From positions 1 to 64,000 of the IMG/VR virus record IMGVR_UViG_3300023174_000046: a DNA stretch of 64,000 nucleotides; one strand, 5' to 3'. Positions 26,897 through 63,482 of this stretch are shown piece by piece; position 1 is the first letter of the stretch; every line of letters begins with the position of its first letter. The notes below the pieces were generated by a model. That model ran no database searches. It was given only the letters and a program-made list of their open reading frames with translations, and was not told the origin of the DNA. Both the position numbers and the translations under genes were made by a program.

Positions 26897-26971
26897 TGCT
26901 CGGTAGCTCAGCGGTAGAGCGGTGCACTGTTAATGCATTGGTCGTAGGTTCGATCCCTACTCGAGCAGCCA
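26897..26971 (+). tRNA. tRNA-Asn(GTT)
   Basis: gtgca-CT GTT AA-tgcat; encoded CCA. Confidence 0.93.
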
Positions 26972-26976: not shown

Positions 26977-27429
26977 TTAACTGGTTATATAGGGTTTGTT
27001 TTTAAGATCTAAAACATAATCACTACAAATACCTAGACAATCTGAAATAACGTGAGGGTACTTTTCAGGCAACACATCAATGCTTTGTTTAATTTTATCT
27101 TCGCTTGGAAAAGCCCATATATAGTTTTTACTTGTTAGTGTTAACTTGTCTTGTTCATGCCAGAAATAGTGTATATCTTTATTCTGTAACTCAACCACAG
27201 CTTGAGTGTTTTTGCAGTGAACCCAAAGCCGTCCTCTTCTCTCATATAACCAATTGTAGTTTATTATGTATTGAGGGTAATCGTGTCCTAGGAACCATTG
27301 TGCCTCTTTAAACCATAAATCTATTTCAGCATCAAAACCTAAACTTAGTGCACTATCAATATAGTTGGGAGAATTTTCCTGAGCAACATTTACCCCGTTA
27401 ATATTGCCTCTATGTGATATTACTATCAT
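26977..27429 (-). CDS. GDPD/PLC-like phosphodiesterase domain protein
   Basis: ISHRGN...ENSP.YI..AL..GFDAEIDLW...LGHD...WVHCKN. Confidence 0.75.
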   Translation of the reverse strand: MIVISHRGNINGVNVAQENSPNYIDSALSLGFDAEIDLWFKEAQWFLGHDYPQYIINYNWLYERRGRLWVHCKNTQAVVELQNKDIHYFWHEQDKLTLTSKNYIWAFPSEDKIKQSIDVLPEKYPHVISDCLGICSDYVLDLKNKPYITS

Positions 27430-28118
27430 TTTTTATAAAAATCAGCTTCTGATATATATGAACCATAATATTTATCCCAAAGATATTTGTGGTAATTTTC
27501 ATTAAGATTGCTTGTGCTTATCTCTTGTAAATTAGATGGAGTTACAAACATCCACTTTAAACTATCATTTGATCGATATGAAAAGAAATCTTGCACCGTA
27601 CTGTTATATTTTTTATCAAAAATATTTTTTAGATTTATCATTCCATCATAATTATATACCCAGTCTTTACTTTCCCATATAGAAATTAAAAAATCAACAT
27701 CACCATACATAAACAGATCACCAATTAAATGGTTTAAATTTGTTTGAGCTGTAATTAGACATTTCTTATTTTCTTTATTAATTATATTTTCACAATATTC
27801 AAATATATTATCATGTGACGAGAATGAGTCTAAGCGCATTTTTAGAATATTTTTTGCACCTAATTCTTTTGCGAGAATTAAACTATTTCTTACACATACA
27901 GGGTGACCAAAACCTATTTCAGAGGGCATAAACGGATACCACAGTATCCTATCAGCTTTTATAGAATCTTTAATACTATCAATACCGTGTCCAGCAACGA
28001 TAACTGTTAAATCACTATATTTTTGTTTAAAGTAGTCTACAACAAAATTAAAGATATTAACTTTGTCTTTCTCAGATTCATCTCTAACAAAACAATGACT
28101 TAATATCAGGTATTTCAT
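27426..28118 (-). CDS. putative glycosyltransferase-like protein
   Basis: operon context; KMRLD and IGDLFMYG motifs. Confidence 0.45.
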   Translation of the reverse strand: MKYLILSHCFVRDESEKDKVNIFNFVVDYFKQKYSDLTVIVAGHGIDSIKDSIKADRILWYPFMPSEIGFGHPVCVRNSLILAKELGAKNILKMRLDSFSSHDNIFEYCENIINKENKKCLITAQTNLNHLIGDLFMYGDVDFLISIWESKDWVYNYDGMINLKNIFDKKYNSTVQDFFSYRSNDSLKWMFVTPSNLQEISTSNLNENYHKYLWDKYYGSYISEADFYKK

Positions 28119-28689
28119 AGTTAAATAATTCAAAATCTTTTTTATAAAAATCTATAATAATTTCTAACGACAACGGTGTAAACCATTTTTTTAAATTCTT
28201 ATCTGTATTAGTTTGCCTCATGCGCATAGTATAGTCCAATTTCAAATCCAATTTTTCATTTATTTTTTGACAAGATTCGTTAAAGTTTTCATATCTATAT
28301 ATACAGTCAGCGATGCATGCATCATTTTCATAAAAAAAGCTATATTGGGGTACAAAATGAATTTCTGCGCATAAAGAAGTTTTATTGAAATTTAAACAAA
28401 ATAATTCAATATCTGAAAACTGCAAAGCTTCTTTTGACCATGTTATAATATGCCCGGGATCTGTTATAGCATCAACATATGTAGAAATAAATCTATCTAA
28501 TGGATTTCTTGTAAAGCCAAATTTAAAATAATCTTTATGTGTTTTTGTCTCAGGAATTTTCGAAAGTGGTGCGTGGTAAATATTTGGTAACTGCCCTAGT
28601 GTGGAATGATCTAGCTGCGTCATTATTGTAGTTGAACCAGTTTTTGGAACAGAAGTGAATATAAATTTTTTGTCGTGATTAACAATCAT
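28084..28689 (-). CDS. sulfotransferase family 2 protein
   Basis: PKTGSTT 5'-PSB loop, RNPLDRFIS 3'-PB motif, HFVPQ, YKKDFELFNY. Confidence 0.85.
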   Translation of the reverse strand: MIVNHDKKFIFTSVPKTGSTTIMTQLDHSTLGQLPNIYHAPLSKIPETKTHKDYFKFGFTRNPLDRFISTYVDAITDPGHIITWSKEALQFSDIELFCLNFNKTSLCAEIHFVPQYSFFYENDACIADCIYRYENFNESCQKINEKLDLKLDYTMRMRQTNTDKNLKKWFTPLSLEIIIDFYKKDFELFNYEIPDIKSLFC

Positions 28690-29834
28690 ATATCAGAGAT
28701 ACGTGTATAATGTCTACCACCATCAAACTTATTGTTAGTAATTATCTCTATATATTTCTTAAATTGTTCTTTGCTTAAGTTCTTAGAAGGGAAAGAAAAG
28801 AAATTGCAGCAATTGTGCTTGATTGCATACTCACAAGAATAGTCATCGTACACAAGGCATGATCTTATGCCTTCTACTTTATTGGCACAAATATTAACTC
28901 CTTGCCCGGTTCTACAAAACGCAAGAACTAGATCAACATTTTTTTTAAGCAGTTGCTTGGCTGATTCTTTGACGTATATATTGTAATCACAATCTTTGCC
29001 TGAGAATGTTCCGTAATCAATATAATCAATCTTATATTCATTCAACAACTCTATTGCGAGTTCCTTAGCCTCATAACCAGAATGATCAGAGCATAAACCT
29101 ATACGCAATGTATCATACAATACATTTTTTTCATAGAATTCTAATTCTAACGGTGTTCCTAATACATAGAATTTATCTGTTAAGATTGCATTAACCTTTA
29201 AATTATTTTTTATGTAGTGATTATAAATAGGACATATATAATATTCATTTTTTACTGTTTCTTTATTTTCAATCATTATTGATGCATACTTAAAAAACAA
29301 TTCTGGTTTTTTAAAGAAATATAAACCTGCTGCAGCGTTATCGCTTATAACTTCTTTTTCTTTTGTTTCAACAACAAATCCATCTTCACCCAACCTTGCA
29401 TAGCTATGATCGGGGCTATTCGCTTTAAAGGTAAGCAGTGATGCATCGTATTTAATAAACAAGTCTAGATCAAAATTTGGCGCAAAAGTAACATCCGGAG
29501 TATAGACAACAAGCGGCAGGGCGTTGTCAATATATTCACGAGAATACAAACAAGTACATAATGCACCGCCTGTTAATTCATTTAATTCTATAATCGTTAT
29601 ATTATTGCCAAATTTTTTCTTTAAAAAACTATCGATTGAAAAATTTAAAACGTGTTGCTTCTGAACAATAAAAATTATATTTGCGTCACTCAAGTTAAAG
29701 GGTGTCAATGCATGCTCTAATATTGTCTTCTTATTACAAGGTATCATTGGCTTGGGCATCAAATAACCTGCTTCTTTAAAGCGGTTTGCAGAGCCAGCTA
29801 TAGGTAATACTAAGTTATATTTTTTTGAGCTCAT
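28686..29834 (-). CDS. sugar-phosphate nucleotidyltransferase fused to RpiB/LacAB isomerase
   Basis: N: PIAGSANRF..GY..PKP, EKEVISD.A.AGLY; C: SDHSGY, CRTGQG.NI.ANKV.GIR, HN.CN, FDGGRH..RI. Confidence 0.85.
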   Translation of the reverse strand: MSSKKYNLVLPIAGSANRFKEAGYLMPKPMIPCNKKTILEHALTPFNLSDANIIFIVQKQHVLNFSIDSFLKKKFGNNITIIELNELTGGALCTCLYSREYIDNALPLVVYTPDVTFAPNFDLDLFIKYDASLLTFKANSPDHSYARLGEDGFVVETKEKEVISDNAAAGLYFFKKPELFFKYASIMIENKETVKNEYYICPIYNHYIKNNLKVNAILTDKFYVLGTPLELEFYEKNVLYDTLRIGLCSDHSGYEAKELAIELLNEYKIDYIDYGTFSGKDCDYNIYVKESAKQLLKKNVDLVLAFCRTGQGVNICANKVEGIRSCLVYDDYSCEYAIKHNCCNFFSFPSKNLSKEQFKKYIEIITNNKFDGGRHYTRISDI

Positions 29835-30483
29835 ATGTTATTAAATCGTGTGACGGCTTTATTGATTTATGCACATTTAGTTTATTTTCAATTAAATTAC
29901 ATAAAACGTATGCTGCAAATTTATCACCCAACCCTAATACATTCACATTATCAACAATCTCAGCATTAAAATCGGTAGAACCATCTCTTGTGTAAAGAGT
30001 GCTGCCCGTCTTCTTATGCAGAATTATGTTTGGGATTTTTCTTGATAATTCCTCCATACTAATAAAACAATCTTCATCAGAAATAAACAACAAATCTATC
30101 TTGTTTAAGAATTCAGAAGTTCCATCTAGATGTCTACCATTACAAACATCTGCGGTAACGAAACCGTTTAAATTTTCAATAAACGAGATATCTTCTAATT
30201 CATTAATATACATTATATGATGTATTGAAGAAGACTGCACTATAGCGGGTGAGCTATAGAGATTGAGACATGATTTGCTAGTTCTCTTTGATTCCTTTTG
30301 ATTTATCATTACAAGGGATTCACCTATTGCAGTAGGTTGTAAAGAAATTTTGAGGTGAGGTTTATATTCTTTTATGCTCTTCCACACATTACCCATGCAA
30401 CCGACCGAAGTCGTATTTTCAAAACCGTTAAATATGTTATCGAAGCTCAGATGGCCGTAGAGAGAGATATCAAAACTTTTCAT
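29815..30483 (-). CDS. PfkB-family carbohydrate kinase
   Basis: GCMGNV and C-terminal NVLGLGDKFAA anion-hole motif. Confidence 0.75.
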   Translation of the reverse strand: MKSFDISLYGHLSFDNIFNGFENTTSVGCMGNVWKSIKEYKPHLKISLQPTAIGESLVMINQKESKRTSKSCLNLYSSPAIVQSSSIHHIMYINELEDISFIENLNGFVTADVCNGRHLDGTSEFLNKIDLLFISDEDCFISMEELSRKIPNIILHKKTGSTLYTRDGSTDFNAEIVDNVNVLGLGDKFAAYVLCNLIENKLNVHKSIKPSHDLITYELKKI

Positions 30484-31000
30484 GTTGATCTATTGCGTAT
30501 ATGTTTTCTATGCTGTAGTTAGAAATAAGATCTCTCTCTAATAACCATTCGTACAGTTCTAATACACAATTGTCACCTCCTTTATTCTTTAAAACGTGGG
30601 AAATTTTTTTAATTTCTTTTGGAGCATCGCTCGGGCAAAAAGCATATTTTACTTTTTTCATAATTTCTAAATCAAACGTATCATCTCCCATAAACACTGC
30701 TTCATCTGATAAGCAATTATATTTTTCTAATAATGTATGCAAAAACTCACTCTTGCACATACCCCGGGTATAATAAAAAGGTATATTTCTATTTTTAGCT
30801 ATAGCCTCATTTATCTTGTTATCTCCTGATAAAAAAACAACTTCAATATTTACAGATTTAAATTTTTTAATAGCAGTAAAGTCTTTATCGCAGAATGTTT
30901 TGTACGCTGCAGTGCCGCTGCTGTCGTAGTATTTTTTACCATCTGTTAAAATACCATCTACATCTAATATTATTAATTTTATCAAAATATTATTCTCCAA
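30470..31000 (-). CDS. KdsC-like HAD phosphatase
   Basis: LDVDGILTDG, FMGDDTFD, PSDA, GG..CVLE. Confidence 0.85.
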   Translation of the reverse strand: MENNILIKLIILDVDGILTDGKKYYDSSGTAAYKTFCDKDFTAIKKFKSVNIEVVFLSGDNKINEAIAKNRNIPFYYTRGMCKSEFLHTLLEKYNCLSDEAVFMGDDTFDLEIMKKVKYAFCPSDAPKEIKKISHVLKNKGGDNCVLELYEWLLERDLISNYSIENIYAIDQHEKF

Positions 31001-31609
31001 TTATCTTATCAAATTAACATCTACATCTACACGTTCTTCACTTATACTGTTTGTTGTGCAATGATGTTTTAATAAAGTCTCGGGATGAAAAATTATATTA
31101 TTATCGATATAATCATTTATTCTTAGGTATATCTCTGATATTTTATCCATGGTTTTTGAGTCAGAAAACCAGAATTGGTCACAATACCCGCCAAGATAAT
31201 CTTTTTCTCTGTTGCCAATCAATACAATAGCATTATTCGTTGTTCTCAATTTGACCTTATTTGTAAATGTACAATCTGGTCTCAATCTCACTACTACATC
31301 AAAATCTTCACCAGTTTCAACTTCATAATCGCGTTTCAATTGAACACATTTGTAAACTTTATACATCCACTTTAAAATATTTGTTATGTTAGGGTTAGTT
31401 CCGCTCGATTTTGCTGTAAATTTTGCAAGTTTATTTTTGTAAAGATCAAGCTCTGGTACATACAAGGATCTCTCTGCAATAAGCCCTGGTAAAGGAACAT
31501 CTGTTACAGTAAATATCTTATGATCGCAGTCAAATAAATTTGAAATTATGTTATCTTTGTTCTGTTCCCAGGTTCTTGTTTGGCCTGAAATACATATAGC
31601 AACTTTCAT
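31001..31609 (-). CDS. putative glycosyltransferase (MKxAxCxSGQxR family)
   Basis: VAICISGQTR, FDVVVRLRPD, CDQFW, HPETLL. Confidence 0.6.
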   Translation of the reverse strand: MKVAICISGQTRTWEQNKDNIISNLFDCDHKIFTVTDVPLPGLIAERSLYVPELDLYKNKLAKFTAKSSGTNPNITNILKWMYKVYKCVQLKRDYEVETGEDFDVVVRLRPDCTFTNKVKLRTTNNAIVLIGNREKDYLGGYCDQFWFSDSKTMDKISEIYLRINDYIDNNIIFHPETLLKHHCTTNSISEERVDVDVNLIR

Positions 31610-31673: not shown

Positions 31674-31680
31674 TTTTATT

Positions 31681-31754
31681 CGGGCATTAGCACAGCCTGG
31701 TAGTGCACTTGCTTTGGGAGCAAGATGTCGCAGGTTCAAATCCTGCATGCCCGA
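31681..31754 (+). tRNA. tRNA-Pro(TGG)
   Basis: cttgc-TT TGG GA-gcaag. Confidence 0.93.
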
Positions 31755-31761
31755 AGTTTTT

Positions 31762-39518: not shown

Positions 39519-40478
39519 ATGGATATTTCGTTGCATTACGAGAACGTATTTCTCAAGCCTAACTTTAATACTGTACAAACAAGATCACAAATAGACACAG
39601 AAGTTATGTTTTGTGGCAAGACATTCATGCTGCCTGTGATACCTGCAAATATGAAATGCTGTGTTGATAGTGATGTTTGTAAGCTTTTAGATTCTAAGCA
39701 ATGCTTTTATATCATGCATAGATTTGATGAAGACATACAAAATTTTGTACGATATGCAAATTTACAAAATTTTAATACTGTATCCATCAGTGTAGGTATA
39801 CAGCAAAAAGATAGAAACCTTGTAACTGCTATTGGTCAAAGCTTGATGCGAGTAGATTTTATTACAATTGACGTTGCACATGGACATCATTCAAAAGTTG
39901 CAGATCAAATTAAACACATTAAACAAACATTGCCTGGCACAAAAGTTATAGCAGGTAATATCGCTACGTTCGAAGGTGTTGAATATCTGCATAGAGCTGG
40001 TGCTGATGCAGTTAAAGTTGGTATTGGTGGTGGTTATGCGTGTACTACAAAAGATAAGACAGGATTTACTTTTCCTATGTTTAGCTGTATTATAGAGTGT
40101 GCAAAGGACAGAGATGTGCCTATTATTGCAGATGGCGGTGTTCGTAGCAACGGTGATATTGCTAAAGCACTAGTAGCAGGTGCAAAGATGGTGATGTGTG
40201 GTTCTATTTTTGCAGCATGCTCAGATAGTCCTGCACCTGCTGTAAAAGATGCTTCTGGTAGACGATACAAACAATACTACGGGTCTGCTAGTATACACAA
40301 TAAACTTGATAAGAAAAATATTGAGGGTACTATGAAGCTTATGGATACAGATTCGTTTACTTACGAAGAAAAATTGCAAGAAATAAAACAAGACTTACAA
40401 AGTGCAATTAGTTATGCAGGTGGTTGCAATCTTGGTATATTAAATTTAAATAGAGTGGCCTACGGGGTAAGATTATGA
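39519..40478 (+). CDS. guaC: GMP reductase
   Basis: PANM, MHRF, TIDVAHGH, KVGIGGG..CTT, IADGG...GDIAKA; no CBS domains. Confidence 0.88.
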   Translation: MDISLHYENVFLKPNFNTVQTRSQIDTEVMFCGKTFMLPVIPANMKCCVDSDVCKLLDSKQCFYIMHRFDEDIQNFVRYANLQNFNTVSISVGIQQKDRNLVTAIGQSLMRVDFITIDVAHGHHSKVADQIKHIKQTLPGTKVIAGNIATFEGVEYLHRAGADAVKVGIGGGYACTTKDKTGFTFPMFSCIIECAKDRDVPIIADGGVRSNGDIAKALVAGAKMVMCGSIFAACSDSPAPAVKDASGRRYKQYYGSASIHNKLDKKNIEGTMKLMDTDSFTYEEKLQEIKQDLQSAISYAGGCNLGILNLNRVAYGVRL

Positions 40479-41030: not shown

Positions 41031-41614
41031 TCTTATCGTTTACTGGTCCACAAAGTTCAGGTAAGACTACTCTTCTAAAGAAGTGTAAAGAGTATTATGG
41101 TTCGAAGTTATGTTATATTGATGAAGTTACTAGACTAATTAAACGTTGGCATAATTGTGATATAAATGAAGAAGGTGCAAGTGATGTTACGCAGACATTA
41201 ATTCTAAATAAAGAATTTGAGAATTTGTTTTATAATTACAAAGGATTTGGATTTCAAGGCATATTGCATGATCGTTGCTTGATGGATGGCATGGTTTATA
41301 CAAGTTATTTTGCTGGTAGTAGACTAAATGATTTTCCTGTATCTAATAGCTTAGGTTTGTTATACTATACAAATTATATTAAAAAGTATGATCATATCTT
41401 TTATCCAAGTCCTCATGATGTTCCGCTGGTTGATGATGGTGAGAGAAGCATTAATAAAGAATTTAGGGATGCTATTATTGATAAGTATGAAAATTTTTGG
41501 CTAAAAGATGAGAGATTGAAAGATAAAGTTACTATTTTAAGAGGGACTGTTGACGAGCGAATGGAACAGATTAAGTCAAAGATATGTCAGTTGATGCCAA
41601 GCCTTTCTGTTTAG
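41027..41614 (+). CDS. P-loop nucleotide kinase-like (AAA_28/NadR-type) protein
   Basis: GPQSSGKTT, E..R, DRC..D..VY, DDGER. Confidence 0.8.
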   Translation: MILSFTGPQSSGKTTLLKKCKEYYGSKLCYIDEVTRLIKRWHNCDINEEGASDVTQTLILNKEFENLFYNYKGFGFQGILHDRCLMDGMVYTSYFAGSRLNDFPVSNSLGLLYYTNYIKKYDHIFYPSPHDVPLVDDGERSINKEFRDAIIDKYENFWLKDERLKDKVTILRGTVDERMEQIKSKICQLMPSLSV

Positions 41615-52189: not shown

Positions 52190-53185
52190 TCAACTCTTTT
52201 CTATTTGCGATTTAATCCAAGAATAAGTCTTTTTTAACCCTTCTGCGAGAGGGTAATTTGGCTGCCAATTTAACTTTTCGCCAATTAATTTATTGCAAGA
52301 ATTTCTGCCCCTTACACCAGTAGGACCATCTAATTTATAATTTTTTGTAATTTTCTTGTTTTCAATGGAGCATGCTAAATCAACTAATTGGTTAATTGTC
52401 ACGCGCTCTTCTGAGCCAATATTGACTGGTCCGAGAAAGTTTGATTCCATCAACCGACGGATACCTTCAACACATTCATCTATATATAGAAATGATCTGG
52501 TCTGCTCACCGTCACCCCAAATTTCAATATCACCAGTTGATTCTAAGACTTTGCGACAAATTGCAGCAGGCGCTTTCTCCTTGCCACCCTTCCATGTTCC
52601 TTGAGGACCAAAAATATTATGAAAGCGTGCAATACGCACATCAATGTTATAATTTCTGTTGTAAGCAAGGTAAAGCCGTTCGCTAAAGAGTTTTTCCCAC
52701 CCATATTCGCTGTCGGGGTTTGCTGGGTAGGCGCTGCTTTCCTCACAATTGGGATTATTTGGATCAAGTTGATTGTGTTCAGGATACATGCAAGCGCTAC
52801 TGCTATAAAATATTTTCTTTAAACCCACATCAACAGCTTCATCTAGAACGTTTAAATTAATTGTTGCAGAATTATGCATCACATCAGCATCATGTGCACC
52901 AGTAAAGATGTAACCTGCTCCGCCCATATCTGCTGCAAGCTGATACACTTCATCAAACGATGTATGGTGCGTGTGCGTGTAATAGTGCCAAGATTTATCC
53001 ATTGCTTTGCGTACGTTGTCACGCTCTCTTAAATCCAAAATAAAGAATTGATCTGCTTGTGTGGAAGAATATTCAGGATATTTTAAATCTACACCACGTA
53101 CAAAATATCCCTCGCTTTTTAATCTTGTAACTAAATGGTTACCAATAAAACCACCTGCGCCTAAAACTAATGCACTTTTTTTCAT
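52190..53185 (-). CDS. NAD-dependent sugar epimerase, GDP-mannose 3,5-epimerase-like
   Basis: GAGGFIG, LAADMGGAG, SSACMYP, YGWEK, GGKEKAPAA.CRK, GVRGRNS. Confidence 0.9.
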   Translation of the reverse strand: MKKSALVLGAGGFIGNHLVTRLKSEGYFVRGVDLKYPEYSSTQADQFFILDLRERDNVRKAMDKSWHYYTHTHHTSFDEVYQLAADMGGAGYIFTGAHDADVMHNSATINLNVLDEAVDVGLKKIFYSSSACMYPEHNQLDPNNPNCEESSAYPANPDSEYGWEKLFSERLYLAYNRNYNIDVRIARFHNIFGPQGTWKGGKEKAPAAICRKVLESTGDIEIWGDGEQTRSFLYIDECVEGIRRLMESNFLGPVNIGSEERVTINQLVDLACSIENKKITKNYKLDGPTGVRGRNSCNKLIGEKLNWQPNYPLAEGLKKTYSWIKSQIEKS

Positions 53186-53772
53186 ATTTTTGTTATTAAG
53201 GAGATTTCTTTATTACCGTCATGGTTTGAGATGTGAGCCTTCTTTTTAATGTTGTATTTTTTTAACGGAAAGAAGTCACATGAGAGTGGTCTGCTACGCA
53301 ATGGCATGTCTTGCCAATCGTCCTTCTGATCGCAACTATTGGTTATAAGAATGTAGTTAAAATTAGCAATAGCACGATCTAGAAAATAAACAATTTCGTC
53401 ACATAACCAATGCTGTATTACATCTTTTAGTAAAAGTAAATCACCTGTATAGTTAAAAAAGTTTTCAATTTGCTCAATATATTCAAAGCGAATATTAGGT
53501 GCACTGTAAGTTGAATTGTGGTGGTCGATCAAGCTCTTTACACAGTCGATGCCTAGATAATTTACACTGGACCAGTCAATAAGGCGTGAAAACTGCCAAT
53601 CACCACACCCATAATCAGTTACAGTTTTAATATTATTTTTTTGTATAAAATCTGTAATAAATTTTCTATAACCTACAGTATGTTCTGGATAAGAGCCAGA
53701 ACCTGAACCATTCCACTCGTTTGTGTCGTAAATCCTTGTAAAATGGTTAATATGTGATTTGTGATCGAGCAT
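53182..53772 (-). CDS. class I SAM-dependent methyltransferase
   Basis: SGSGS, DYGCGD, YLGID, KDVIQH. Confidence 0.85.
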   Translation of the reverse strand: MLDHKSHINHFTRIYDTNEWNGSGSGSYPEHTVGYRKFITDFIQKNNIKTVTDYGCGDWQFSRLIDWSSVNYLGIDCVKSLIDHHNSTYSAPNIRFEYIEQIENFFNYTGDLLLLKDVIQHWLCDEIVYFLDRAIANFNYILITNSCDQKDDWQDMPLRSRPLSCDFFPLKKYNIKKKAHISNHDGNKEISLITKI

Positions 53773-53798
53773 TATGATATGTTATAATATATTTGTTA

Positions 53799-54593
53799 TT
53801 AATCAATAGATATTAAATTGGCGTAATAATTGAACATGGCCTTTTCTCTTGAGTTTTTAATTAAAGTGTCGTATTTTGTTTCTAAAAACTCTTCTGTTAT
53901 TTCTTCAAAAGAATTTACAAACAAAATAGGCAGGTCAGTAAAATAATCTAAAGCGGTGTGATTCTCTACTATAGGAATCACATTTAAATATATTGCTTCC
54001 CAAATTCGATGACAGTCAATACTGTTGCCTGGTGGCGACACAACATACTTATATGCTTTAAGCTTAGTAAGATAATCTTTATATTGATGAATTTCTGTAT
54101 CTATATTAATAAATGTCTTAGTTTTTAAAATATTGAGAATATTTTGTCGCTTAAGCAGGTTAGTTGAAATATTAAAATTACTATAAACGAGTTTTGTTTT
54201 TTTAATAGGTGTATTGATCACATCTAATAAAGCATTCTTGTCACCGTGCGGCCACTTCTCATTAGCTATGCCGATGGGTATTGGTTGCAATTTATCGTGC
54301 TTAATGTGGCAATTCATGGCATGCCATTTAATGAGGTTATTGCTGTTTAAGATGTTTAGGTATTCTTCTGTAATCCAAAGATCGGAATTATGTGTAATAA
54401 GTTTAAAGGTATAGTCAATTCGGGGTAGTACTTTTTCGGCAAAAATTTTTAACCAATCTGTATATAAAAATATAATTTTGGGTTTGTTTGCAAGATTTAC
54501 AAGCGGCTTGCTCTCATCTATATATTCTGAAGCTAGAGCTTTAAAACTATTACCTGATATAATATCTTCTATACTGATAGGTGTTACTAACAT
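53799..54593 (-). CDS. exostosin/GT47-like glycosyltransferase
   Basis: THNSD, PIPIG, SPPGN.IDCHR.WEA.YL..IPI. Confidence 0.75.
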   Translation of the reverse strand: MLVTPISIEDIISGNSFKALASEYIDESKPLVNLANKPKIIFLYTDWLKIFAEKVLPRIDYTFKLITHNSDLWITEEYLNILNSNNLIKWHAMNCHIKHDKLQPIPIGIANEKWPHGDKNALLDVINTPIKKTKLVYSNFNISTNLLKRQNILNILKTKTFINIDTEIHQYKDYLTKLKAYKYVVSPPGNSIDCHRIWEAIYLNVIPIVENHTALDYFTDLPILFVNSFEEITEEFLETKYDTLIKNSREKAMFNYYANLISID

Positions 54594-55459
54594 AGTGCGT
54601 CAAGTTTTTTACAATGTACATGAAGATTCATAATAGGTATATGTGTATTATTATATACAATATAGGGCGTTTCTTCAACCTTAACATCAATTTTTTTATC
54701 CTGAATAGCAGCCCCTATGTAGTGATGTCTACCGGTCCAGCCTCTATCGTGTCCGTTATTCGTTCCACCAAGATATTGGCCATATGATGCACCATCAAAC
54801 AATACGTTTAACTTATCAAAATTATCACTACCAACACCTTCCGGTAAAATAGGTAAGTAATCCATAATGCCTTTTGTGTGTGTGTATACCAAGTCAATAA
54901 TTATCATTTCTGATAAATGGTCATATGGTGTAAACTGTTTAACAAAATTTTCACCTTTCATAATAAGTTGTTTTGTTTTTTCAATAAATTTTTTATAATG
55001 ATCTAAGCTGTTACAAAAAACAAATCCTGCAGAGCTACAATATGGTCCTACTCGAGTAAAGTATATTGAAGGGGGGAGCACTTCTAATACGCTTAAATCT
55101 GAATATATAAGGTTATCATATTCAAGATGTACAAACTTGTTTATATTATTTTCTTCACAATACAGATAAACAGCATAGAGTCGAATTAGTGTCAATAACC
55201 AAAACGGGTCGTTGCAGAAAGAAGGAAAATGCTGCTTACATAAGTAATAAAATTCATTTATTTTTTCATGACTAGATTCACTAATATTTTCGTTGGTTAA
55301 AACAATGGATTTTTGTTGTAAAAATCTTTCACTTTGTGCAAAACTATATTTTGCATATTCAGGTAAATCTGAAAATGTAAAGGTCGATAATTTAAGGTCG
55401 CTTGAAAATTTAAATTTATCTGGACTTAAATGTACGTAAATTGCTTTTAAATTTTCCAT
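54587..55459 (-). CDS. putative glycosyltransferase
   Basis: FW..T..R, HLEYDNLIY, FDGA.YGQYLGG, NLHVHCK. Confidence 0.6.
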   Translation of the reverse strand: MENLKAIYVHLSPDKFKFSSDLKLSTFTFSDLPEYAKYSFAQSERFLQQKSIVLTNENISESSHEKINEFYYLCKQHFPSFCNDPFWLLTLIRLYAVYLYCEENNINKFVHLEYDNLIYSDLSVLEVLPPSIYFTRVGPYCSSAGFVFCNSLDHYKKFIEKTKQLIMKGENFVKQFTPYDHLSEMIIIDLVYTHTKGIMDYLPILPEGVGSDNFDKLNVLFDGASYGQYLGGTNNGHDRGWTGRHHYIGAAIQDKKIDVKVEETPYIVYNNTHIPIMNLHVHCKKLDALC

Positions 55460-57090
55460 GAATGTATCGATAATATTGATTTATCAGTTTTAAGGGCTCT
55501 CTCAATAGTTGCAACAACATCGTTTTCAGACCAATTTTGTCCTTGATTTAAATCTCTGCCTTCATTCATTTGACTCAATGGTTCAAATGTATACAGGCCA
55601 GGATAATACTGATTAACAATATTAGCATAGGTTTCATATTCAGAGAAATGAAATACCTGATTCATGCTAGGCCCGATATCCTTTAGAAGTAGTTCAGGAG
55701 TACTGTAGCCGGTACTATCAAGAAACGATTGAATAATATTTTTATTAAAGAGACCTAAATCACCAATACCTGTATGATTTAAAGATTTTTTAAGATTAAA
55801 ATGTCTTCTATTAAAGAGAAAGTACGGAAAGTGATTTTGCTTCCACCCGTAATACCAGACTGGCTTGTTTTCCTTGAACAGGGGTAATTGTTTTAAAATA
55901 ATTGTATCACAATCTAAAGCAAAATAATATTGAGAATGACTCTTAAAGAAAAGTTTTAAAAATTGTTGATAAGTCCAATTAGGTCTAAATCCTATAAAGC
56001 TTTTATCCGTTAAATTTACAACATCTAAATCATTGATATATTCAATGCCTTGAATCTTACTATTAATCTTATGTGGTGAACACACAAAAACATTTTTTGG
56101 TGCTAAGTGTTTTAAGGCATATTCATAAACATACTTTAATTTTATCTCATCTTTTTCAATTAAAGGTATAAACAAATCATAGTCAGTATTTGTATCCACC
56201 GGTAATGGTGTAAATGGTTTACATTTTACAGGTGTATTAAAAATTCTAAAATGCTTCTTTTCAATCTCTTCTTCGTTTGGAAAAGGCTGGTACCACTTGC
56301 AGCCATTGATAACGGGTCTCTTCATGGGTACATTTTGTACGTAGGAAAACCAAAGATGGCCGACAAGTAAATTACGCTTGAATACATCTTCATTATAATA
56401 ATTTTCAATATGGCCTTGTGTTGAAGTGCTTCCGTGCTCAATATGAAAACAAACAGGTGGAAGTTTGTTAACAAATTTAGTATTTACAAGTATTGCTAGC
56501 ATTGTAGCCGAATATGTATCCCAATACATACGTCCGAGAACTAGATCTTCAAAGTGGTTTCTTATTTGTAACCAGATATCTTTTTTAATAAGAAAAGCAT
56601 CAAAGCCATGCACAGAATAAGATTCTAATTTTGGAATATCATCCAACGATTCAATGTCGTAAATGTGCATGCGACTGATGGCATATGCATCCGAGCCATC
56701 TATTTCTTTTAAGAATCTGTTCGAAAGAATAATATCATTATTTAAAAAAAGAAAATAATCACAATCAGTACTAGCTAATACATCAAATATTTCTTTAACA
56801 GAAGGTAGTTCCTTTTTATTGCTATCTATTTCTTCTTTTCTAATAATATATTCATTGGTTAAACCATCATGTTGAAAATAATCATGGATGAGTTCATTAG
56901 AACGAACAGTTAAATTGTTGAGTGTTGTGAAATGATCATACTTAATATTTTCATTTGTAAAACAAACATTATATAAATCAATATTAGTATTCTTATTTTT
57001 AATTTTAACTAAACTATCAATACAAAATTTCTCTCTTTTTTCTAGAGAGTCATAAGTTTTAAACCCGTTTATACCAATTGCAATTTTCAT
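55447..57090 (-). CDS. two-domain putative glycosyltransferase (GT-A-like plus DUF6492-like)
   Basis: FLNNDII, GFDAF, YWD; W.YQQFLKL, LDCDT, FSEYETY. Confidence 0.65.
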   Translation of the reverse strand: MKIAIGINGFKTYDSLEKREKFCIDSLVKIKNKNTNIDLYNVCFTNENIKYDHFTTLNNLTVRSNELIHDYFQHDGLTNEYIIRKEEIDSNKKELPSVKEIFDVLASTDCDYFLFLNNDIILSNRFLKEIDGSDAYAISRMHIYDIESLDDIPKLESYSVHGFDAFLIKKDIWLQIRNHFEDLVLGRMYWDTYSATMLAILVNTKFVNKLPPVCFHIEHGSTSTQGHIENYYNEDVFKRNLLVGHLWFSYVQNVPMKRPVINGCKWYQPFPNEEEIEKKHFRIFNTPVKCKPFTPLPVDTNTDYDLFIPLIEKDEIKLKYVYEYALKHLAPKNVFVCSPHKINSKIQGIEYINDLDVVNLTDKSFIGFRPNWTYQQFLKLFFKSHSQYYFALDCDTIILKQLPLFKENKPVWYYGWKQNHFPYFLFNRRHFNLKKSLNHTGIGDLGLFNKNIIQSFLDSTGYSTPELLLKDIGPSMNQVFHFSEYETYANIVNQYYPGLYTFEPLSQMNEGRDLNQGQNWSENDVVATIERALKTDKSILSIHSWKI

Positions 57091-57869
57091 GGCTTTATTT
57101 GTTTTAAGAAGCTAACAACTTCTTGCTTTGTTTTGTTTGGTATCTGTGTTACAGCAACATTATGTTTTTTTATAAAAAATTCCCACTCTTTATGTATTTT
57201 CTGGGTACGAGAACCATCAGGATTATCTGGTGCGTCAATGCGACTGCTCGTCTCGGGGTTATTCATGATATAATTATCCGAATTTGTTAAATCTGCAAAC
57301 CACCAGAACGGTGCAGCATAATCCCCGCGGATGGACTCCCTGTACGTGAGATCAACATCCCATGCAAATCTGTAGCTTGTATCATACAGACCGTTCTTAC
57401 TGTAACACGATGCATGATGATATGTAAATTCGTTGCACATATTTGGATAAAATGAAATGCTTGCGTCCTTATTATACTGTACAGTTAATTTGGGGGTTCG
57501 TTTTTCAGGAGTACCAGATTCCCAGGATGTGCTTACAAATGAAAAGTACTTTAACCCGCTTGCTTTGGACGCATCTATATATTTGTAAAATATATCTTTA
57601 TCCTTAATAACCATATCATCTTCAATAATAAAAATGTGATCGCATTTTTTTTCTAAAAGAAAATTAATACAATCATTTCTGCATACACTTGGATATCTGT
57701 TTTTACGGTGCTGGATCCAATCTGAATCATATTTCTTAGAATATTCTTTACCACCATTTACTGTTACGAATTCATCAATTACATCTCGTGGCAAAGAGCT
57801 GTACAATGCATCATAATAATGCTCTGTATTGTATGTGGTAATTCCTACGCCAATTTTTTCTGTACTCAT
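57087..57869 (-). CDS. GT2 glycosyltransferase
   Basis: GVGITTYN, IFIIEDD, GLYD; paralog of next gene. Confidence 0.8.
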   Translation of the reverse strand: MSTEKIGVGITTYNTEHYYDALYSSLPRDVIDEFVTVNGGKEYSKKYDSDWIQHRKNRYPSVCRNDCINFLLEKKCDHIFIIEDDMVIKDKDIFYKYIDASKASGLKYFSFVSTSWESGTPEKRTPKLTVQYNKDASISFYPNMCNEFTYHHASCYSKNGLYDTSYRFAWDVDLTYRESIRGDYAAPFWWFADLTNSDNYIMNNPETSSRIDAPDNPDGSRTQKIHKEWEFFIKKHNVAVTQIPNKTKQEVVSFLKQIKP

Positions 57870-58630
57870 AATGATTTAAAATATTCAATGACCTTTTCAA
57901 GGCCATCATAACTCTGGCTAGGGTTTGTAACATCAACGTTATGTTTTTGCTTAAATCTCTCTACACCTTTTCTAAAATTTTCCACCCAATTACCTTTTCT
58001 TATAGTAGATTTATCGTGATGGTAGTCTTGATCAACAATGTATTGATTGCTATTCTCTAGGTCAATAAACCATCGAAAGGGCGGGTGATATTTGTGGTTT
58101 ATAGCAATCATTGTATGATCGACATGTTCCATAGCATTAATATACTCTTCATCTAGTAATCCGATCTCTTCAAAAACTGATCTATGATAGTAACTACATG
58201 CACCGTATACATTGAAGTATAGTGCAACTCTCTGGCCTCTTATTTCAAAAATTTTACGAGGATTAGGTGTGTTATTTTGTTTGTTGTCTTGACCGTGTAA
58301 ACAGTAGTTGAAATGCTTCACTTTAGTTTTTTTGCTAGCTTCTATGTATGCTTCAAATGCATTCTGAAGAAAAATAACATCATCTTCAACAAGGAAGATA
58401 TGTTCACAGCCTCTCTCTAAGAGAAATTTTATTGCTTTATTCTTTGACTTGCCAACACCTTGATTTACTTCATTATTAATAATATTCATCCCAGACTGTT
58501 CAATTCTCTGAATCCCGTCATTTATAATAACCAATTCATCATACCAGTCCTTATTGAGACTTTTAATACATTTCTTAAGAAAAGCAGGCCGATCACAGGT
58601 TACAATGCCTACACCTATTTTCTCTTTCAT
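57866..58630 (-). CDS. GT2 glycosyltransferase
   Basis: VTCDRP, INDG, N.GV...KN, LVEDD, IGLLDE, EHVD. Confidence 0.85.
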   Translation of the reverse strand: MKEKIGVGIVTCDRPAFLKKCIKSLNKDWYDELVIINDGIQRIEQSGMNIINNEVNQGVGKSKNKAIKFLLERGCEHIFLVEDDVIFLQNAFEAYIEASKKTKVKHFNYCLHGQDNKQNNTPNPRKIFEIRGQRVALYFNVYGACSYYHRSVFEEIGLLDEEYINAMEHVDHTMIAINHKYHPPFRWFIDLENSNQYIVDQDYHHDKSTIRKGNWVENFRKGVERFKQKHNVDVTNPSQSYDGLEKVIEYFKSL

Positions 58631-62840: not shown

Positions 62841-63482
62841 TTAAACACTCCAAGATGTACCTGCAAAAGGATTGCTCATGCCTTTGGTAACTTTGGTACC
62901 AAGAGGTGCACCCATCTCAACGTTAATGCCTGCATTAACTACATTTACCTGCTCAAGTGATGGTTGTAATGTTGTTGCAATTGTATTGTTTGTAACCACA
63001 TGCTTATCAGAAGCATATGGGTTATGATCCGGTACATGTTGATAGCCTGAACTAACAATTGCAGAATTTTTATCATGCTCCCATACTTCAACCCTACTAA
63101 CCCAACATCTATTATTAGTTATGCCTCTTACATGCGCATCAGCTACATCATAACACCAGTCTGCTGTTCTCTCAATACCAACACCTTTGTCCATAACTCT
63201 TAGATCTGCAGCACCTAAGGTGTGTAAATTTTTAAAATGATCTAGCAAAGGATCATCAGCTGAAATGCATAATGTATGATCAAATTGATTTTCTAAGACT
63301 TGCTTAAGTTCCTTTAAACCACCAAAATCTACAACCCAGTTCTTTTCATCTAGATAATTACATTCAAACCAAAATTTTGCTATCAACCTGTATCCATGGA
63401 TATATTTGCAATGGCTGTCTGCTTTCCACTGTCTAAATGCACAACTTCCTAATTCAATTATCTTTGTACTTTCGTATTTCAT
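62841..63482 (-). CDS. queD: 6-carboxy-5,6,7,8-tetrahydropterin synthase
   Basis: SHC..IHGY, VVDFG.LK, FDH, G.E, V.V.E...NSA; TTGATT-N16-TATAAT-N6-ATG. Confidence 0.9.
   Translation of the reverse strand: MKYESTKIIELGSCAFRQWKADSHCKYIHGYRLIAKFWFECNYLDEKNWVVDFGGLKELKQVLENQFDHTLCISADDPLLDHFKNLHTLGAADLRVMDKGVGIERTADWCYDVADAHVRGITNNRCWVSRVEVWEHDKNSAIVSSGYQHVPDHNPYASDKHVVTNNTIATTLQPSLEQVNVVNAGINVEMGAPLGTKVTKGMSNPFAGTSWSV

What the first reader, a model, noticed from the sequence alone, without database searches (positions are those of the whole stretch)
26977..31609. AT-rich sugar-nucleotide island splitting the tRNA array, with a nucleotidyltransferase-RpiB fusion
Seen: seven overlapping or abutting antisense genes between tRNA-Asn and tRNA-Pro: GT-like, KdsC-like phosphatase, PfkB kinase, NTP-transferase fused to an RpiB/LacAB isomerase, sulfotransferase, GT-like and GDPD-like. 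Inference: isomerase, kinase, phosphatase and nucleotidyltransferase are the same four steps as NDP-heptose synthesis (GmhA/HldE/GmhB) but built from different families. This suggests an undescribed route to an activated sugar (pentulose or similar) that is transferred and sulfated on virion proteins, the host surface or the modified DNA base.
Basis: partly seen in the sequence, partly recalled or inferred. Interest (0 to 1): 0.62.

Follow-up and report, generated by a model that had tools for sequence, protein, structure and literature searches.

The report
Phage sugar-activation cassette with NTase–RpiB fusion
A freshwater T4-like phage carries a compact seven-gene cassette, shared with many aquatic phages, that most likely turns a host pentose-phosphate intermediate into a nucleotide-activated sugar and uses it to build a sulfated glycan. 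The logic is known, but the enzymes, including a nucleotidyltransferase–RpiB isomerase fusion, are a new and untested set.

Summary
Seven tightly packed minus-strand genes (26977-31609) lie between tRNA-Asn and tRNA-Pro:
- a DUF7796 GT-like protein
- a KdsC-type HAD phosphatase
- a minimal ribokinase-fold kinase
- an NTase–RpiB fusion
- a Sulfotransfer_2 enzyme
- a WavE-like GT-A protein
- a 150-aa mini-GDPD

The island is only mildly AT-rich (30.7% GC against 35.7%, 3rd percentile).

The phosphatase–kinase–fusion triad, usually with the GDPD-like and DUF7796 genes, is a portable module. It occurs in cyanophages Bellamy and SynMITS9220M01, and the fusion has 852 relatives (E<=1e-5) in aquatic metagenomes. 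A motif scan found no fusion in 185,579 prokaryote species genomes.

The best reading is ketose-P → aldose-P (RpiB) → aldose-1,ω-bisphosphate (kinase) → aldose-1-P (phosphatase) → NDP-sugar (NTase). The sugar is probably ribose. GT transfer and sulfation follow.

This logic is already characterised twice: in NDP-heptose synthesis, and in the Ru5P → UDP-arabinofuranose route of RB69/HY126-type phages. The enzymes here are not orthologous to either.

The sugar, the nucleotide and the acceptor are unknown. A target on C5-modified cytosine in DNA is unlikely, because no ThyA-family gene was found.

Verdict: a new variant of a known kind, of moderate interest.

The parts
31001..31609 (-). o7: DUF7796-family protein, candidate glycosyltransferase and first gene of the cassette
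   Evidence: Pfam DUF7796 E 1.2e-3 and phrog_13607 E 1e-13. ESM Atlas structure TM 0.88 to viral clusters named 'capsular polysaccharide biosynthesis' and 'glycosyltransferase family'. Homologues sit next to the cassette in L004, L007, L009, L011-L013, L015 and L021-L024, and in Bellamy gene 208. No PDB sequence relative was found.
30470..31000 (-). o6: KdsC/YrbI-type HAD-IIIA phosphatase, proposed to remove the terminal (ω) phosphate
   Evidence: TIGR01670 E 1.3e-26 (93 bits, cut-off 107) and the KDN-9-P phosphatase family E 7e-24. PDB 2p9j E 3e-20 and KdsC 1j8d E 2e-17. HAD motifs DxDGxxTD and GDDxxD are visible in the translation.
29815..30483 (-). o5: minimal (222 aa) ribokinase/PfkB-fold kinase, proposed anomeric kinase
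   Evidence: Invariant GxxGN and NxxGxGD motifs in 20 homologues. AF2 model pLDDT 92.7. Foldseek top hits are ribokinase 1vm7 at E 1e-12, nucleoside kinase, ketohexokinase and fructokinase. Sequence-only hits are weak.
29127..29834 (-). o4 N-terminal domain (aa 1 to about 236): sugar-1-phosphate nucleotidyltransferase
   Evidence: Domain profile against PDB: 4evw E 1.3e-34, then ST0452, RmlA and GalU at 1e-5 to 1e-4. Invariant LPxAGxAxRF, PKP, D114, EKE and GTP motifs.
28686..29108 (-). o4 C-terminal domain (aa 243-382): RpiB/LacAB-family sugar-phosphate isomerase
   Evidence: PF02502 E 3e-32. TIGR00689 scores 99 bits, above its cut-off of 88. PDB T. maritima RpiB 1o1x E 7e-19. D250, H251, C307, H340, N341, R374 and R378 are invariant in 19 fusions.
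28084..28689 (-). o3: PAPS-type carbohydrate sulfotransferase
   Evidence: PF03567 E 7e-18 (66 bits, cut-off 22) and phrog_3347. The PKTGST and RNPxxR motifs are visible in the translation. It lies directly downstream of the fusion in L021-L026 as well.
27426..28133 (-). o2: WavE-like / GT-A-fold putative glycosyltransferase
   Evidence: No Pfam or PHROG hit. ESM Atlas structure TM 0.75 to a bacterial WavE (PF07507) cluster and 0.67 and 0.58 to GT2 clusters. Homologues follow the sulfotransferase in L021, L022 and L024.
26977..27429 (-). o1: 150-aa minimal GDPD/PLC-like phosphodiesterase, role unknown; it tracks the NTase family
   Evidence: Invariant HRG, EN, ExD and HD motifs. AF2 pLDDT 82. 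VIA-align: 1o1z Z 11.0, 140 aa, rmsd 3.1, and the top 22 hits are all GDPD/PLD. phrog_34507 E 1e-29. Present in 17 of 50,697 phage records, all of which also carry the NTase family.
26897..26971 (+). tRNA-Asn, left boundary of the island
   Evidence: ARAGORN.
31680..31755 (+). tRNA-Pro, right boundary of the island
   Evidence: ARAGORN.
52190..58630 (-). Second glycan cluster, probably functionally linked: NAD epimerase/dehydratase, an RXYLT1_C/GT47-like GT, GT2 and unknowns
   Evidence: Pfam. Homologues of the window genes at 55447, 57866 and 60351 lie directly upstream of the cassette in L022.

Best explanation
The island is a portable, operon-like glycan cassette of aquatic T4-like myoviruses. 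Its core is a self-contained supply line for a nucleotide sugar.

Proposed steps:
1. The RpiB domain of o4 isomerises a host ketose phosphate to the aldose ω-phosphate. The substrate is most likely ribulose-5-P, giving ribose-5-P. Allulose-6-P giving allose-6-P is the second choice.
2. The mini-ribokinase o5 phosphorylates the anomeric hydroxyl, giving an aldose-1,ω-bisphosphate.
3. The KdsC-type HAD o6 removes the ω-phosphate.
4. The NTase domain of o4 condenses the aldose-1-P with an NTP.
5. The GT-like proteins o7 and o2 transfer the sugar to a glycan acceptor. GTs of the 52-58 kb cluster may take part.
6. o3 sulfates the product using host PAPS.

The acceptor is most likely host envelope polysaccharide or virion protein. 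The mini-GDPD o1 works with the NTase on a phosphodiester. It may clear a cyclic or side product of the NDP-sugar, or make or trim a sugar-phosphate linkage.

What is shown: the folds, families and catalytic motifs, the fusion, the synteny and the co-occurrence. What is inferred: the order of steps, the identity of the sugar and nucleotide, the acceptor, and the role of o1.
For: - Families and intact catalytic residues for all four activities.
- The NTase domain groups with sugar-1-phosphate NTases (4evw, RmlA, GalU, ST0452) and not with CMP-ulosonate or HIGH-type enzymes.
- The RpiB domain is closest to Cys-type bacterial RpiB, with every catalytic and phosphate-binding residue invariant.
- A HAD gene and then a kinase-sized ORF lie immediately upstream of the fusion wherever flank is available. 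This holds in Bellamy, SynMITS9220M01, 12 IMG/VR loci, L021-L026 and L034. The kinase itself is detected by similarity in all of these except L003.
- In S-CAM9 and B23 the same NTase family is fused to a beta-PGM-like HAD_2 domain instead of RpiB, and no o5-like kinase was detected nearby. The upstream genes therefore behave as an exchangeable module that supplies sugar-1-P.
- The same chemical logic has been demonstrated for Ru5P → UDP-Araf in T4-like phages (PMC13326640) and, from established knowledge, for NDP-heptose.
- The cassette is always embedded among GTs, methyltransferases, epimerases and sulfotransferases.
Against: - No biochemistry exists for any member.
- The kinase's regiochemistry cannot be read from sequence. 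Its best structural matches phosphorylate primary hydroxyls (ribokinase, fructokinase).
- Characterised KdsC-family phosphatases act on ulosonate phosphates, not on sugar bisphosphates.
- NDP-ribose is not a known glycosyl donor. Known ribofuranosylation uses PRPP (own knowledge).
- The scheme gives no necessary role to o1, which is the NTase's most faithful partner.
- R5P is already abundant in cells, so the need for an RpiB is not obvious.
Confidence: 0.5

Rival explanations
1. Phospho-alcohol or phosphodiester decoration, on the Lic1 or teichoic-acid model. The NTase activates an ω-phosphate compound (a pentose-5-P, pentulose-5-P, alditol-P or similar) as a CDP-type donor. o5 acts as an ordinary ribokinase-like kinase that makes the ω-phosphate. 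The GDPD-like o1 supplies the alcohol from a phosphodiester, or transfers or trims the phospho-group. The product is a phosphodiester-linked, sulfated surface decoration.
For: - o1 co-occurs with the NTase family in 17 of 17 cultured-phage records, including those that lack RpiB and an o5-like kinase.
- o5's best fold matches are primary-hydroxyl kinases.
- JGI labelled fragments of the NTase domain 'choline kinase', a LicC/LicA-type annotation.
- From own knowledge, H. influenzae uses GlpQ (a GDPD), LicA, LicC and LicD in exactly this way.
- RXYLT1_C-like GTs are nearby.
Against: - The NTase profile is closest to anomeric sugar-1-P enzymes.
- It does not explain a dedicated phosphatase placed between kinase and NTase in every locus.
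- No reductase for an alditol route lies in the island.
Confidence: 0.2
2. The activated sugar is used to hypermodify the phage's DNA, as UDP-arabinose is in RB69, DLP3 and HY126. In this genome the acceptor might instead be a 7-deazaguanine base.
For: - The analogous pentose route in T4-like phages serves DNA modification (PMC13326640).
- The window carries QueF-, QueE- and QueD-like genes.
Against: - No ThyA-family or ThyX gene and no RB69 gp48 homologue, even at E 10.
- No similarity to RB69 gp51, gp52, gp53 or gp55 beyond superfamily level.
- The cassette travels with sulfotransferase, fucosyltransferase-like GTs, methyltransferases, aminotransferase and carbamoyltransferase, which are typical of polysaccharide clusters.
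- It also occurs in cultured cyanomyoviruses. To my knowledge these are not reported to have glycosylated DNA.
Confidence: 0.08
3. A Kdo- or ulosonic-acid-type pathway. The RpiB-like domain makes the aldose-5-P precursor, o6 is a true KdsC-type ulosonate-phosphate phosphatase, and the NTase makes the CMP-ulosonate.
For: - o6 is closest to the KdsC and KDN-9-P phosphatases.
- Some relatives carry CTP_transf_3 and aldolase genes nearby.
Against: - No KdsA/DAHP-synthase-type or NeuB-type condensing enzyme in the genome. These genome scans are insensitive to divergent genes.
- The NTase is not of the CTP_transf_3 type.
- The kinase would have no role.
- RpiB chemistry gives ribose-5-P, not arabinose-5-P.
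Confidence: 0.07
4. A central-carbon auxiliary function. RpiB, kinase and phosphatase re-route the host pentose-phosphate pool (R5P or ribose-1,5-bisphosphate) toward nucleotide synthesis, and the glycan genes are merely neighbours.
For: - T4-like cyanophages commonly carry PPP genes such as transaldolase and zwf next to these clusters.
- The best NCBIfam hit of o5 is a ribose-1-phosphate kinase, but weakly (E 5e-4).
Against: - RpiB is covalently fused to a sugar-1-P NTase in all of the 120 best-scoring relatives listed.
- Synteny with GTs and a sulfotransferase is constant.
Confidence: 0.05

Closest known systems
Phage UDP-D-arabinofuranose pathway of RB69, DLP3 and HY126 (A5P isomerase, bifunctional AfhE NTase-kinase, AfhF HAD phosphatase; PMC13326640)
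   Same: It occurs in T4-like phages and starts from ribulose-5-P. It uses the same steps: isomerase, then anomeric kinase giving a pentose-1,5-bisphosphate, then a HAD 5-phosphatase, then a sugar-1-P NTase. One step is fused to the NTase.
   Different: - The isomerase here is RpiB-type, not SIS/KdsD-type, so the expected product is ribose rather than arabinose.
- The kinase is ribokinase-fold, not APH/choline-kinase-like.
- The NTase is fused to the isomerase, not to the kinase.
- The HAD belongs to the KdsC subfamily.
- There is no detectable sequence relationship (hhalign probability about 1%, blastp E 0.8).
- No 5-hydroxycytosine synthase is present.
- The neighbours are polysaccharide-type genes and a sulfotransferase.
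NDP-heptose biosynthesis (GmhA, HldE or HldA/HldC, GmhB; or GmhA, HddA, GmhB, HddC)
   Same: The four-step logic is identical. The kinase fold (PfkB in HldE/HldA), the HAD phosphatase and, in the GDP branch, the PF00483-type NTase are the same superfamilies (established knowledge).
   Different: The isomerase family differs: RpiB here, SIS there, and no SIS_2 was found in the genome. RpiB stereochemistry (erythro C3/C4) does not fit sedoheptulose-7-P, which is inference. The phosphatase is KdsC-type rather than GmhB-type. None of the enzymes reaches an equivalog score.
LPS/glycan auxiliary gene clusters of cyanomyoviruses and pelagimyophages (PMC7029224; PMC7824862)
   Same: They share the genomic setting: hypervariable islands of T4-like aquatic phages with GTs, epimerases, PfkB kinases and NTases. 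These are proposed to remodel the host surface.
   Different: Those papers describe the class in general terms (rfaE-type HIGH NTases, cupin isomerases). Term searches of both papers found no mention of RpiB or of the other module components searched for, so neither describes the NTase–RpiB fusion or the KdsC/mini-kinase/mini-GDPD module.
PDB 4evw, Vibrio cholerae RC9 'nucleoside-diphosphate-sugar pyrophosphorylase' (structural genomics)
   Same: It is the closest solved relative of the NTase domain (profile E 1e-34).
   Different: It is a stand-alone 255-aa protein with no RpiB domain. To my knowledge its substrate is uncharacterised.

Membership tests
RpiB/LacA/LacB sugar-phosphate isomerase family (PF02502, TIGR00689) | Profile score above the curated cut-off | tested here: met
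   PF02502 scores 112 bits (cut-off 24.7). TIGR00689 scores 99 bits (cut-off 88.3).
RpiB/LacA/LacB sugar-phosphate isomerase family (PF02502, TIGR00689) | Catalytic Asp-His, Cys-x-Thr/Ser and His-Asn, and the two phosphate-binding Arg residues of Cys-type RpiB | tested here: met
   D250, H251, C307, H340, N341, R374 and R378 are invariant in 19 fusions. Position 309 is Thr or Ser. The alignment to 1o1x supports this.
Ribose-5-phosphate isomerase B proper (TIGR01120 equivalog) | Equivalog-level score | tested here: not met
   86 bits against a cut-off of 138.65. The substrate is therefore not established.
Sugar-1-phosphate nucleotidyltransferases (PF00483 and relatives) | Profile match, the G-x-G-x-R-type N-terminal loop, and the EKP-like and GTP motifs | tested here: met
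   PF00483 scores 23 bits (cut-off 21.2). The domain profile matches 4evw at E 1e-34 and RmlA/GalU at about 1e-4. The motifs are invariant.
Ribokinase/PfkB superfamily | Pfam PfkB score above cut-off | tested here: not met
   hmmscan gave no PF00294 hit, only Phos_pyr_kin at E 0.03. The genome scan found none either.
Ribokinase/PfkB superfamily | Ribokinase fold with the GG-x-x-N sugar loop and the G-A-G-D anion hole and catalytic Asp | tested here: met
   The motifs are invariant in 20 sequences. The AF2 model has pLDDT 92.7, and Foldseek gives 412 PDB matches at E<=1e-3, led by ribokinase-family kinases.
KdsC/YrbI phosphatase subfamily (TIGR01670) | Subfamily score above cut-off, and HAD motifs I-IV | tested here: inconclusive
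   93.4 bits against a cut-off of 106.95. The KdsC and KDN-9-P equivalogs score far below their cut-offs. The HAD motifs are present, and the closest PDB chains are KdsC-type.
Glycerophosphodiester phosphodiesterase (GDPD) | Pfam GDPD profile match and a full (beta/alpha)8 barrel of about 220-250 aa | tested here: not met
   There is no Pfam or NCBIfam hit, and the protein is only 150 aa. The profile against PDB gives GDPD 7e0v at only E 0.095.
Glycerophosphodiester phosphodiesterase (GDPD) | GDPD-like fold with the catalytic His-Arg, Glu, Glu/Asp and His-Asp residues | tested here: met
   The top 22 VIA-align hits are GDPD/PLD enzymes at Z 8.2-11.0, and the next barrels score 6.6 or less. H6, R7, E18, E35, D37, H49 and D50 are invariant.
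Sulfotransfer_2 (PF03567) | Profile score above cut-off, and the PAPS 5'-PSB and 3'-PB motifs | tested here: met
   66 bits against a cut-off of 22. The PKTGST and RNPxxR motifs were read from the translation.
NDP-heptose pathway (GmhA/HldE/GmhB) | SIS-type sedoheptulose-7-P isomerase GmhA | tested here: not met
   No SIS_2 was found in the 217-kb genome. The only isomerase in the cassette is RpiB-type.
NDP-heptose pathway (GmhA/HldE/GmhB) | Equivalog-level matches to HldE, GmhB or HddC | tested here: not met
   None appears among the NCBIfam hits of o4, o5 or o6.
Phage UDP-arabinofuranose (Afh) pathway | Homology to the AfhE-type NTase-kinase and the AfhF-type HAD (RB69 gp52/53 and gp51) | tested here: not met
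   hhalign gives probability 1.1% for the NTase and 0.2% for the kinase. blastp gives E 0.8 for the HAD. tblastn of RB69 genes against the genome gives E 0.18 or worse.
Phage UDP-arabinofuranose (Afh) pathway | Linked 5-hydroxy-dCMP synthase (a ThyA homologue) that provides the DNA acceptor | tested here: not met
   PF00303 is absent. RB69 gp48 gives no hit at E 10.
CMP-Kdo / CMP-ulosonate pathway | KdsA- or NeuB-type condensing enzyme, and a CTP_transf_3 synthetase | tested here: not met
   PF00793 and PF03102 are absent from the genome. The NTase is not of the CTP_transf_3 type.
Sequential action of the four enzymes | Each product is the next enzyme's substrate | not testable with these tools
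   Only synteny, the fusion and the module exchange support it.

The most novel reading that the evidence does not exclude
The cassette makes a nucleotide sugar that is not currently known as a biological glycosyl donor, NDP-D-ribofuranose or another rare erythro-configured aldose such as D-allose. It does so through a virus-restricted NTase–RpiB enzyme. The mini-GDPD is needed to handle the intrinsically labile cis-2-OH sugar-1-phosphodiester, for example by opening a 1,2-cyclic phosphate by-product. The sugar ends up in a sulfated glycan that aquatic T4-like phages place on their virions or on the infected cell. That would be a widespread but unseen layer of phage glycobiology.
Probability: 0.2. 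Interest if true: 0.78.

Novelty: new variant of a known kind. Interest (0 to 1): 0.52.

Why it matters
The module is abundant. The fusion has 852 relatives at E<=1e-5 in aquatic metagenomes, and it occurs in culturable Synechococcus phages, yet no member has been assayed.

If the route works as proposed, it would be a third, independently assembled version of the 'isomerase, 1-kinase, ω-phosphatase, NTase' strategy. It could reveal a new nucleotide pentose or hexose.

It would also give a handle on what the large 'LPS-like' islands of cyanophages and related freshwater and marine myoviruses actually build. The open question is whether that is superinfection exclusion through host-surface remodelling or glycosylated and sulfated virions.

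Because Bellamy and SynMITS9220M01 are cultured, the question can be tested directly.

Tried and rejected
- **Near-identity DNA search in phages.** It matched only tRNA-Pro.
- **Literature searches.** RpiB + nucleotidyltransferase + phage, and cyanophage + ribose 5-phosphate isomerase + nucleotidyltransferase, each returned 0 papers. The sulfotransferase / virion glycosylation search gave nothing relevant. The primary HY126 AfhE/AfhF paper is not in the library.
- **Sequence-only PDB searches.** The search for o5 was uninformative, and the o5 profile was weak (E 0.014), so the fold was needed. The o7 profile found no PDB relative.
- **Motif scan of 185,579 prokaryote species genomes.** It returned only two stand-alone RpiB genes. 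It used two motifs and is not exhaustive.
- **Search of 'relatives'.** This is not available for a virus record.
- **Own-genome Pfam scans.** They missed o5 with PF00294 and o4 with PF00483. They are therefore insensitive to divergent genes. I treat the negative results for SIS_2, APS kinase, ThyA, ThyX, KdsA and NeuB as 'no canonical copy'. The ThyA result was backed by tblastn with RB69 gp48.
- **NTase-domain word search.** It gave only 20 hits, mostly fragments.
- **Promoter and terminator scan.** It found no more sites than shuffled sequence gives.
- **Rejected readings.** I rejected heptose, because of RpiB stereochemistry and the absence of SIS. I rejected RB69-type DNA arabinosylation. 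I rejected the idea that the tRNA location matters, because relatives carry the cassette without tRNAs.

Full report
**1. What is there**

The window is the first 64 kb of a complete 217,413-bp virus record. The genome is a T4-like myovirus.
- Its major head protein is about 34% identical to those of cyanomyoviruses.
- It carries RNR, a baseplate hub-like protein and a helicase.
- Near-complete copies of the island occur in lake and freshwater metagenomes. Setting aside the two possible source samples, four runs from two studies hold 64-93% of its sampled words.

Between tRNA-Asn (26897-26971) and tRNA-Pro (31680-31755), both on the plus strand, lie seven minus-strand ORFs that overlap or abut. 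In the direction of transcription they are as follows.

| Gene | Coordinates | Identity | Evidence |
|---|---|---|---|
| o7 | 31001-31609 | DUF7796, GT-like | Pfam E 1.2e-3; Atlas structure TM 0.88 to viral 'capsular polysaccharide' and 'glycosyltransferase' clusters |
| o6 | 30470-31000 | KdsC/YrbI-type HAD | TIGR01670 E 1e-26; PDB KdsC E 2e-17 |
| o5 | 29815-30483 | 222-aa ribokinase-fold kinase | see below |
| o4 | 28686-29834 | NTase + RpiB fusion | |
| o3 | 28084-28689 | Sulfotransfer_2 | E 7e-18 |
| o2 | 27426-28133 | WavE-like GT-A | Atlas TM 0.75 |
| o1 | 26977-27429 | mini-GDPD | see below |

- **o5.** Sequence searches barely see it. Its 20-member family keeps the GxxGN loop and the GAGD catalytic motif. 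A confident AF2 model (pLDDT 92.7) matches ribokinase, nucleoside kinase, ketohexokinase and fructokinase at Foldseek E 1e-12 to 1e-10.
- **o1.** It has no Pfam hit. It keeps the HRG, EN, ExD and HD catalytic residues. Its model aligns to 22 GDPD/PLD enzymes at Z 8-11, against 6.6 or less for other barrels.
- **Composition.** Island GC is 0.307 against a genome GC of 0.357. That is the 3rd percentile of equal-sized windows, and two regions elsewhere are lower. It is mildly AT-rich and not an outlier.

**2. It is a portable module, not a one-off**

- tblastn finds the whole fusion in Synechococcus phages Bellamy and SynMITS9220M01 at 45-46% identity. In both, a 178-aa phosphatase and a 223-aa o5 homologue lie directly upstream.
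- Thirteen IMG/VR contigs carry the fusion. Twelve of them show the order o1-like, KdsC, kinase, fusion. The thirteenth, L003, is cut short upstream and shows only a KdsC fragment and the fusion.
- Closer relatives, about 70% identical in the fusion, keep the cassette. L024-L026 have the window's seven-gene layout: the called genes match in size, order and sulfotransferase placement, and homology of all seven was confirmed for L024. They lie beside gp32. L021-L023 have o7, o6, o5, o4, o3 and o2, preceded by GT47/RXYLT1-like, Nucleotid_trans, FUT8-like and, in L021 and L023, epimerase genes.
- None of the thirteen related loci scanned contains a tRNA. The position inside the tRNA array is therefore a feature of this genome, consistent with a mobile cassette.
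- In L022, homologues of window genes at 55-61 kb lie directly upstream of the cassette. The window's second glycan cluster (52190-58630: epimerase, RXYLT1_C-like GT, GT2) is therefore probably part of the same system.
- On a 244-kb contig the triad sits inside a glycan cluster of more than 21 kb, with GT1, GT2, a methyltransferase, a carbamoyltransferase, UDP-glucose dehydrogenase and others.
- The fusion has 852 relatives at E<=1e-5. The 120 best-scoring are all of near-fusion length (353-393 aa), and all come from metagenomes or viromes.
- A motif scan of 185,579 prokaryote species genomes found no fusion. The scan is suggestive, not exhaustive.

**3. Catalytic competence**

- **RpiB domain.** In 19 diverse fusions the residues D250, H251, C307, H340, N341, R374 and R378 are invariant, and position 309 is Thr or Ser. 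These correspond to the catalytic and phosphate-binding set of Cys-type RpiB, judged from the alignment to 1o1x and from my own knowledge of E. coli RpiB.
- **RpiB family level.** The domain scores above the RpiB/LacAB family cut-off but below the RpiB equivalog cut-off.
- **NTase domain.** It keeps the N-terminal AG-x-A-x-R loop, PKP, D114, EKE and GTP motifs. By profile it is closest to 4evw (E 1e-34) and then to the sugar-1-phosphate enzymes ST0452, RmlA and GalU.
- **o6 and o3.** o6 has the HAD motifs. o3 has both PAPS-binding motifs.
- **Membrane association.** None of the seven proteins has a TM-like hydrophobic segment. The maximum 19-residue Kyte-Doolittle mean is 1.3 or less.

**4. 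Mechanism**

The most economical scheme that uses the four core activities has four steps.
1. A ketose phosphate is isomerised to an aldose ω-phosphate by the RpiB domain.
2. o5 phosphorylates the anomeric position, giving an aldose-1,ω-bisphosphate.
3. o6 removes the ω-phosphate, giving an aldose-1-P.
4. The NTase domain condenses the aldose-1-P with an NTP, giving the NDP-sugar.

RpiB chemistry acts on erythro-configured ketoses. Ribulose-5-P giving ribose-5-P is therefore the leading candidate, and allulose-6-P giving allose-6-P is second. Sedoheptulose-7-P does not fit. This reasoning is inference.

Independent support that the upstream genes supply sugar-1-P comes from S-CAM9 and B23. There the same NTase family (35-39% identity) is fused to a beta-phosphoglucomutase-like HAD_2 domain instead. 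No o5-like kinase is detected nearby, and there is no RpiB in the fusion.

Downstream, o7 is the GT-like gene most consistently next to the module. o2 and o3 follow the fusion in the closest relatives. No canonical APS kinase was found in the genome scan, so PAPS would come from the host.

The acceptor is not determined.

**5. The GDPD-like gene**

Among 50,697 phage records, o1 homologues occur in 17, all Synechococcus myoviruses. Every one of these also carries the NTase family, and every record with an NTase match of 34% identity or more carries o1. This includes the HAD_2–NTase phages, where o1 lies immediately downstream of the NTase or close to it.

o1 therefore partners the NTase and not RpiB. 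Its role is unexplained by the simple scheme. Two possibilities, both inferred:
- It handles a cyclic or phosphodiester by-product of a labile NDP-sugar.
- It makes or trims a sugar-phosphate linkage.

This observation is the main support for the rival 'phospho-alcohol / phosphodiester decoration' model.

**6. Comparison with known systems**

- **NDP-heptose synthesis.** The logic is the same. However, the HldE kinase (PfkB fold), GmhB (HAD) and HddC (PF00483) are the same superfamilies as here. Only the isomerase family differs, and no SIS_2 was found.
- **Phage UDP-arabinofuranose route.** More pertinent is a 2026 NAR paper (PMC13326640). It describes how T4-like phages RB69 and DLP3, and HY126 as cited there, convert ribulose-5-P to UDP-D-arabinofuranose. 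The steps are an SIS arabinose-5-P isomerase, a bifunctional NTase-kinase (AfhE) acting through arabinose-1,5-bisphosphate, and a HAD phosphatase (AfhF). The sugar is used to glycosylate 5-hydroxycytosine in DNA.
- **Relationship to that route.** The cassette here is analogous but not orthologous.
  - hhalign probability is about 1% for the NTase and 0.2% for the kinase, and blastp gives E 0.8 for the HAD.
  - RB69 genes find nothing in this genome better than E 0.18.
  - The genome lacks any ThyA-family gene.
  - A C5-pyrimidine DNA target is therefore unlikely.
- **General literature.** Reviews of cyanophage, pelagimyophage and jumbo-phage genomes already describe LPS-like sugar clusters with PfkB kinases and NTases. 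Term searches of those two papers found no mention of RpiB or of the other module components searched for, so this fusion or module is not described there.

**7. Verdict**

The pathway logic is plausible and is now strengthened by synteny, by the module exchange and by a characterised phage analogue. It is not an unprecedented kind of route. The product, the nucleotide, the acceptor and the order of steps all remain inferred.
- I class it as a new variant of a known kind. It is abundant, apparently virus-restricted, biochemically untouched and testable in cultured cyanophages.
- Caveat on negative results: the own-genome family scans missed the divergent o4 and o5 domains. Negative genome scans mean only 'no canonical copy'.

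Noticed in passing
window 42913-43833 (+), 61099-61848 (-), 62841-63482 (-): QueF-like (TIGR03138 E 2e-77), QueE-like (E 6e-13) and QueD-like (E 7e-9) genes. I did not look for a DpdA-type transglycosylase.
   Followed up: partly
window 41584-42903 (+) and 39519-40478 (+): A twitch-domain radical SAM protein (NF033640 E 9e-90, above cut-off) and a GMP reductase-like gene (E 1e-98) lie just upstream of the QueF-like gene.
   Followed up: no
window 52190-58630 (-): A second glycan cluster: an NAD epimerase/dehydratase, an RXYLT1_C/GT47-like GT, a GT2 and several unknown ORFs of 260-547 aa. In relative L022, homologues of the 55-61 kb genes (w55447, the GT2 and AAA_28) are contiguous with the cassette.
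   Followed up: partly
L019 5350-6735 (S-CAM9) and L020 5350-6723 (B23): The same NTase family is fused to an N-terminal HAD_2 (beta-PGM-like) domain instead of a C-terminal RpiB. The o1-like mini-GDPD lies just downstream.
   Followed up: partly
L001 9223-10797, 11932-12830 and 14061-15077 (Bellamy genes 209, 211-212 and 215): Bellamy also carries a tandem double NTase (NTP_transf_3/IspD-like), an 'aldolase', a small gene that RefSeq names 'phosphoheptose isomerase' (the same label RB69's HAD phosphatase gp51 bears), and a GHMP kinase. These suggest further sugar-activation routes in the same island.
   Followed up: no
L001, L002, L019 and L020 (Bellamy, SynMITS9220M01, S-CAM9, B23): In four cultured cyanomyoviruses the glycan island begins within a few kb downstream of a tRNA or tRNA array. 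The metagenomic relatives examined (L004-L024) have no tRNA nearby. This may simply reflect a shared hyperplastic region.
   Followed up: partly
L014 8001-9148: The fusion homologue is split into two tblastn segments (aa 1-189 and 194-382) in different frames. This is a frameshift or an assembly error in that contig.
   Followed up: no
L007 2915-4012 and 13598-15421: In the L004-L015 group the whole glycan island, about 9.6 kb with GT11- and GT10-type fucosyltransferase-like genes, a methyltransferase, an epimerase and a DegT aminotransferase, is inserted between the gp47 (Mre11-like) and gp46 (Rad50-like) genes.
   Followed up: partly
window 4343-8440 (-): A 1365-aa ORF that matches a virion structural protein family (phrog_10356 E 1e-21), in a region of higher GC (0.42-0.47).
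   Followed up: no
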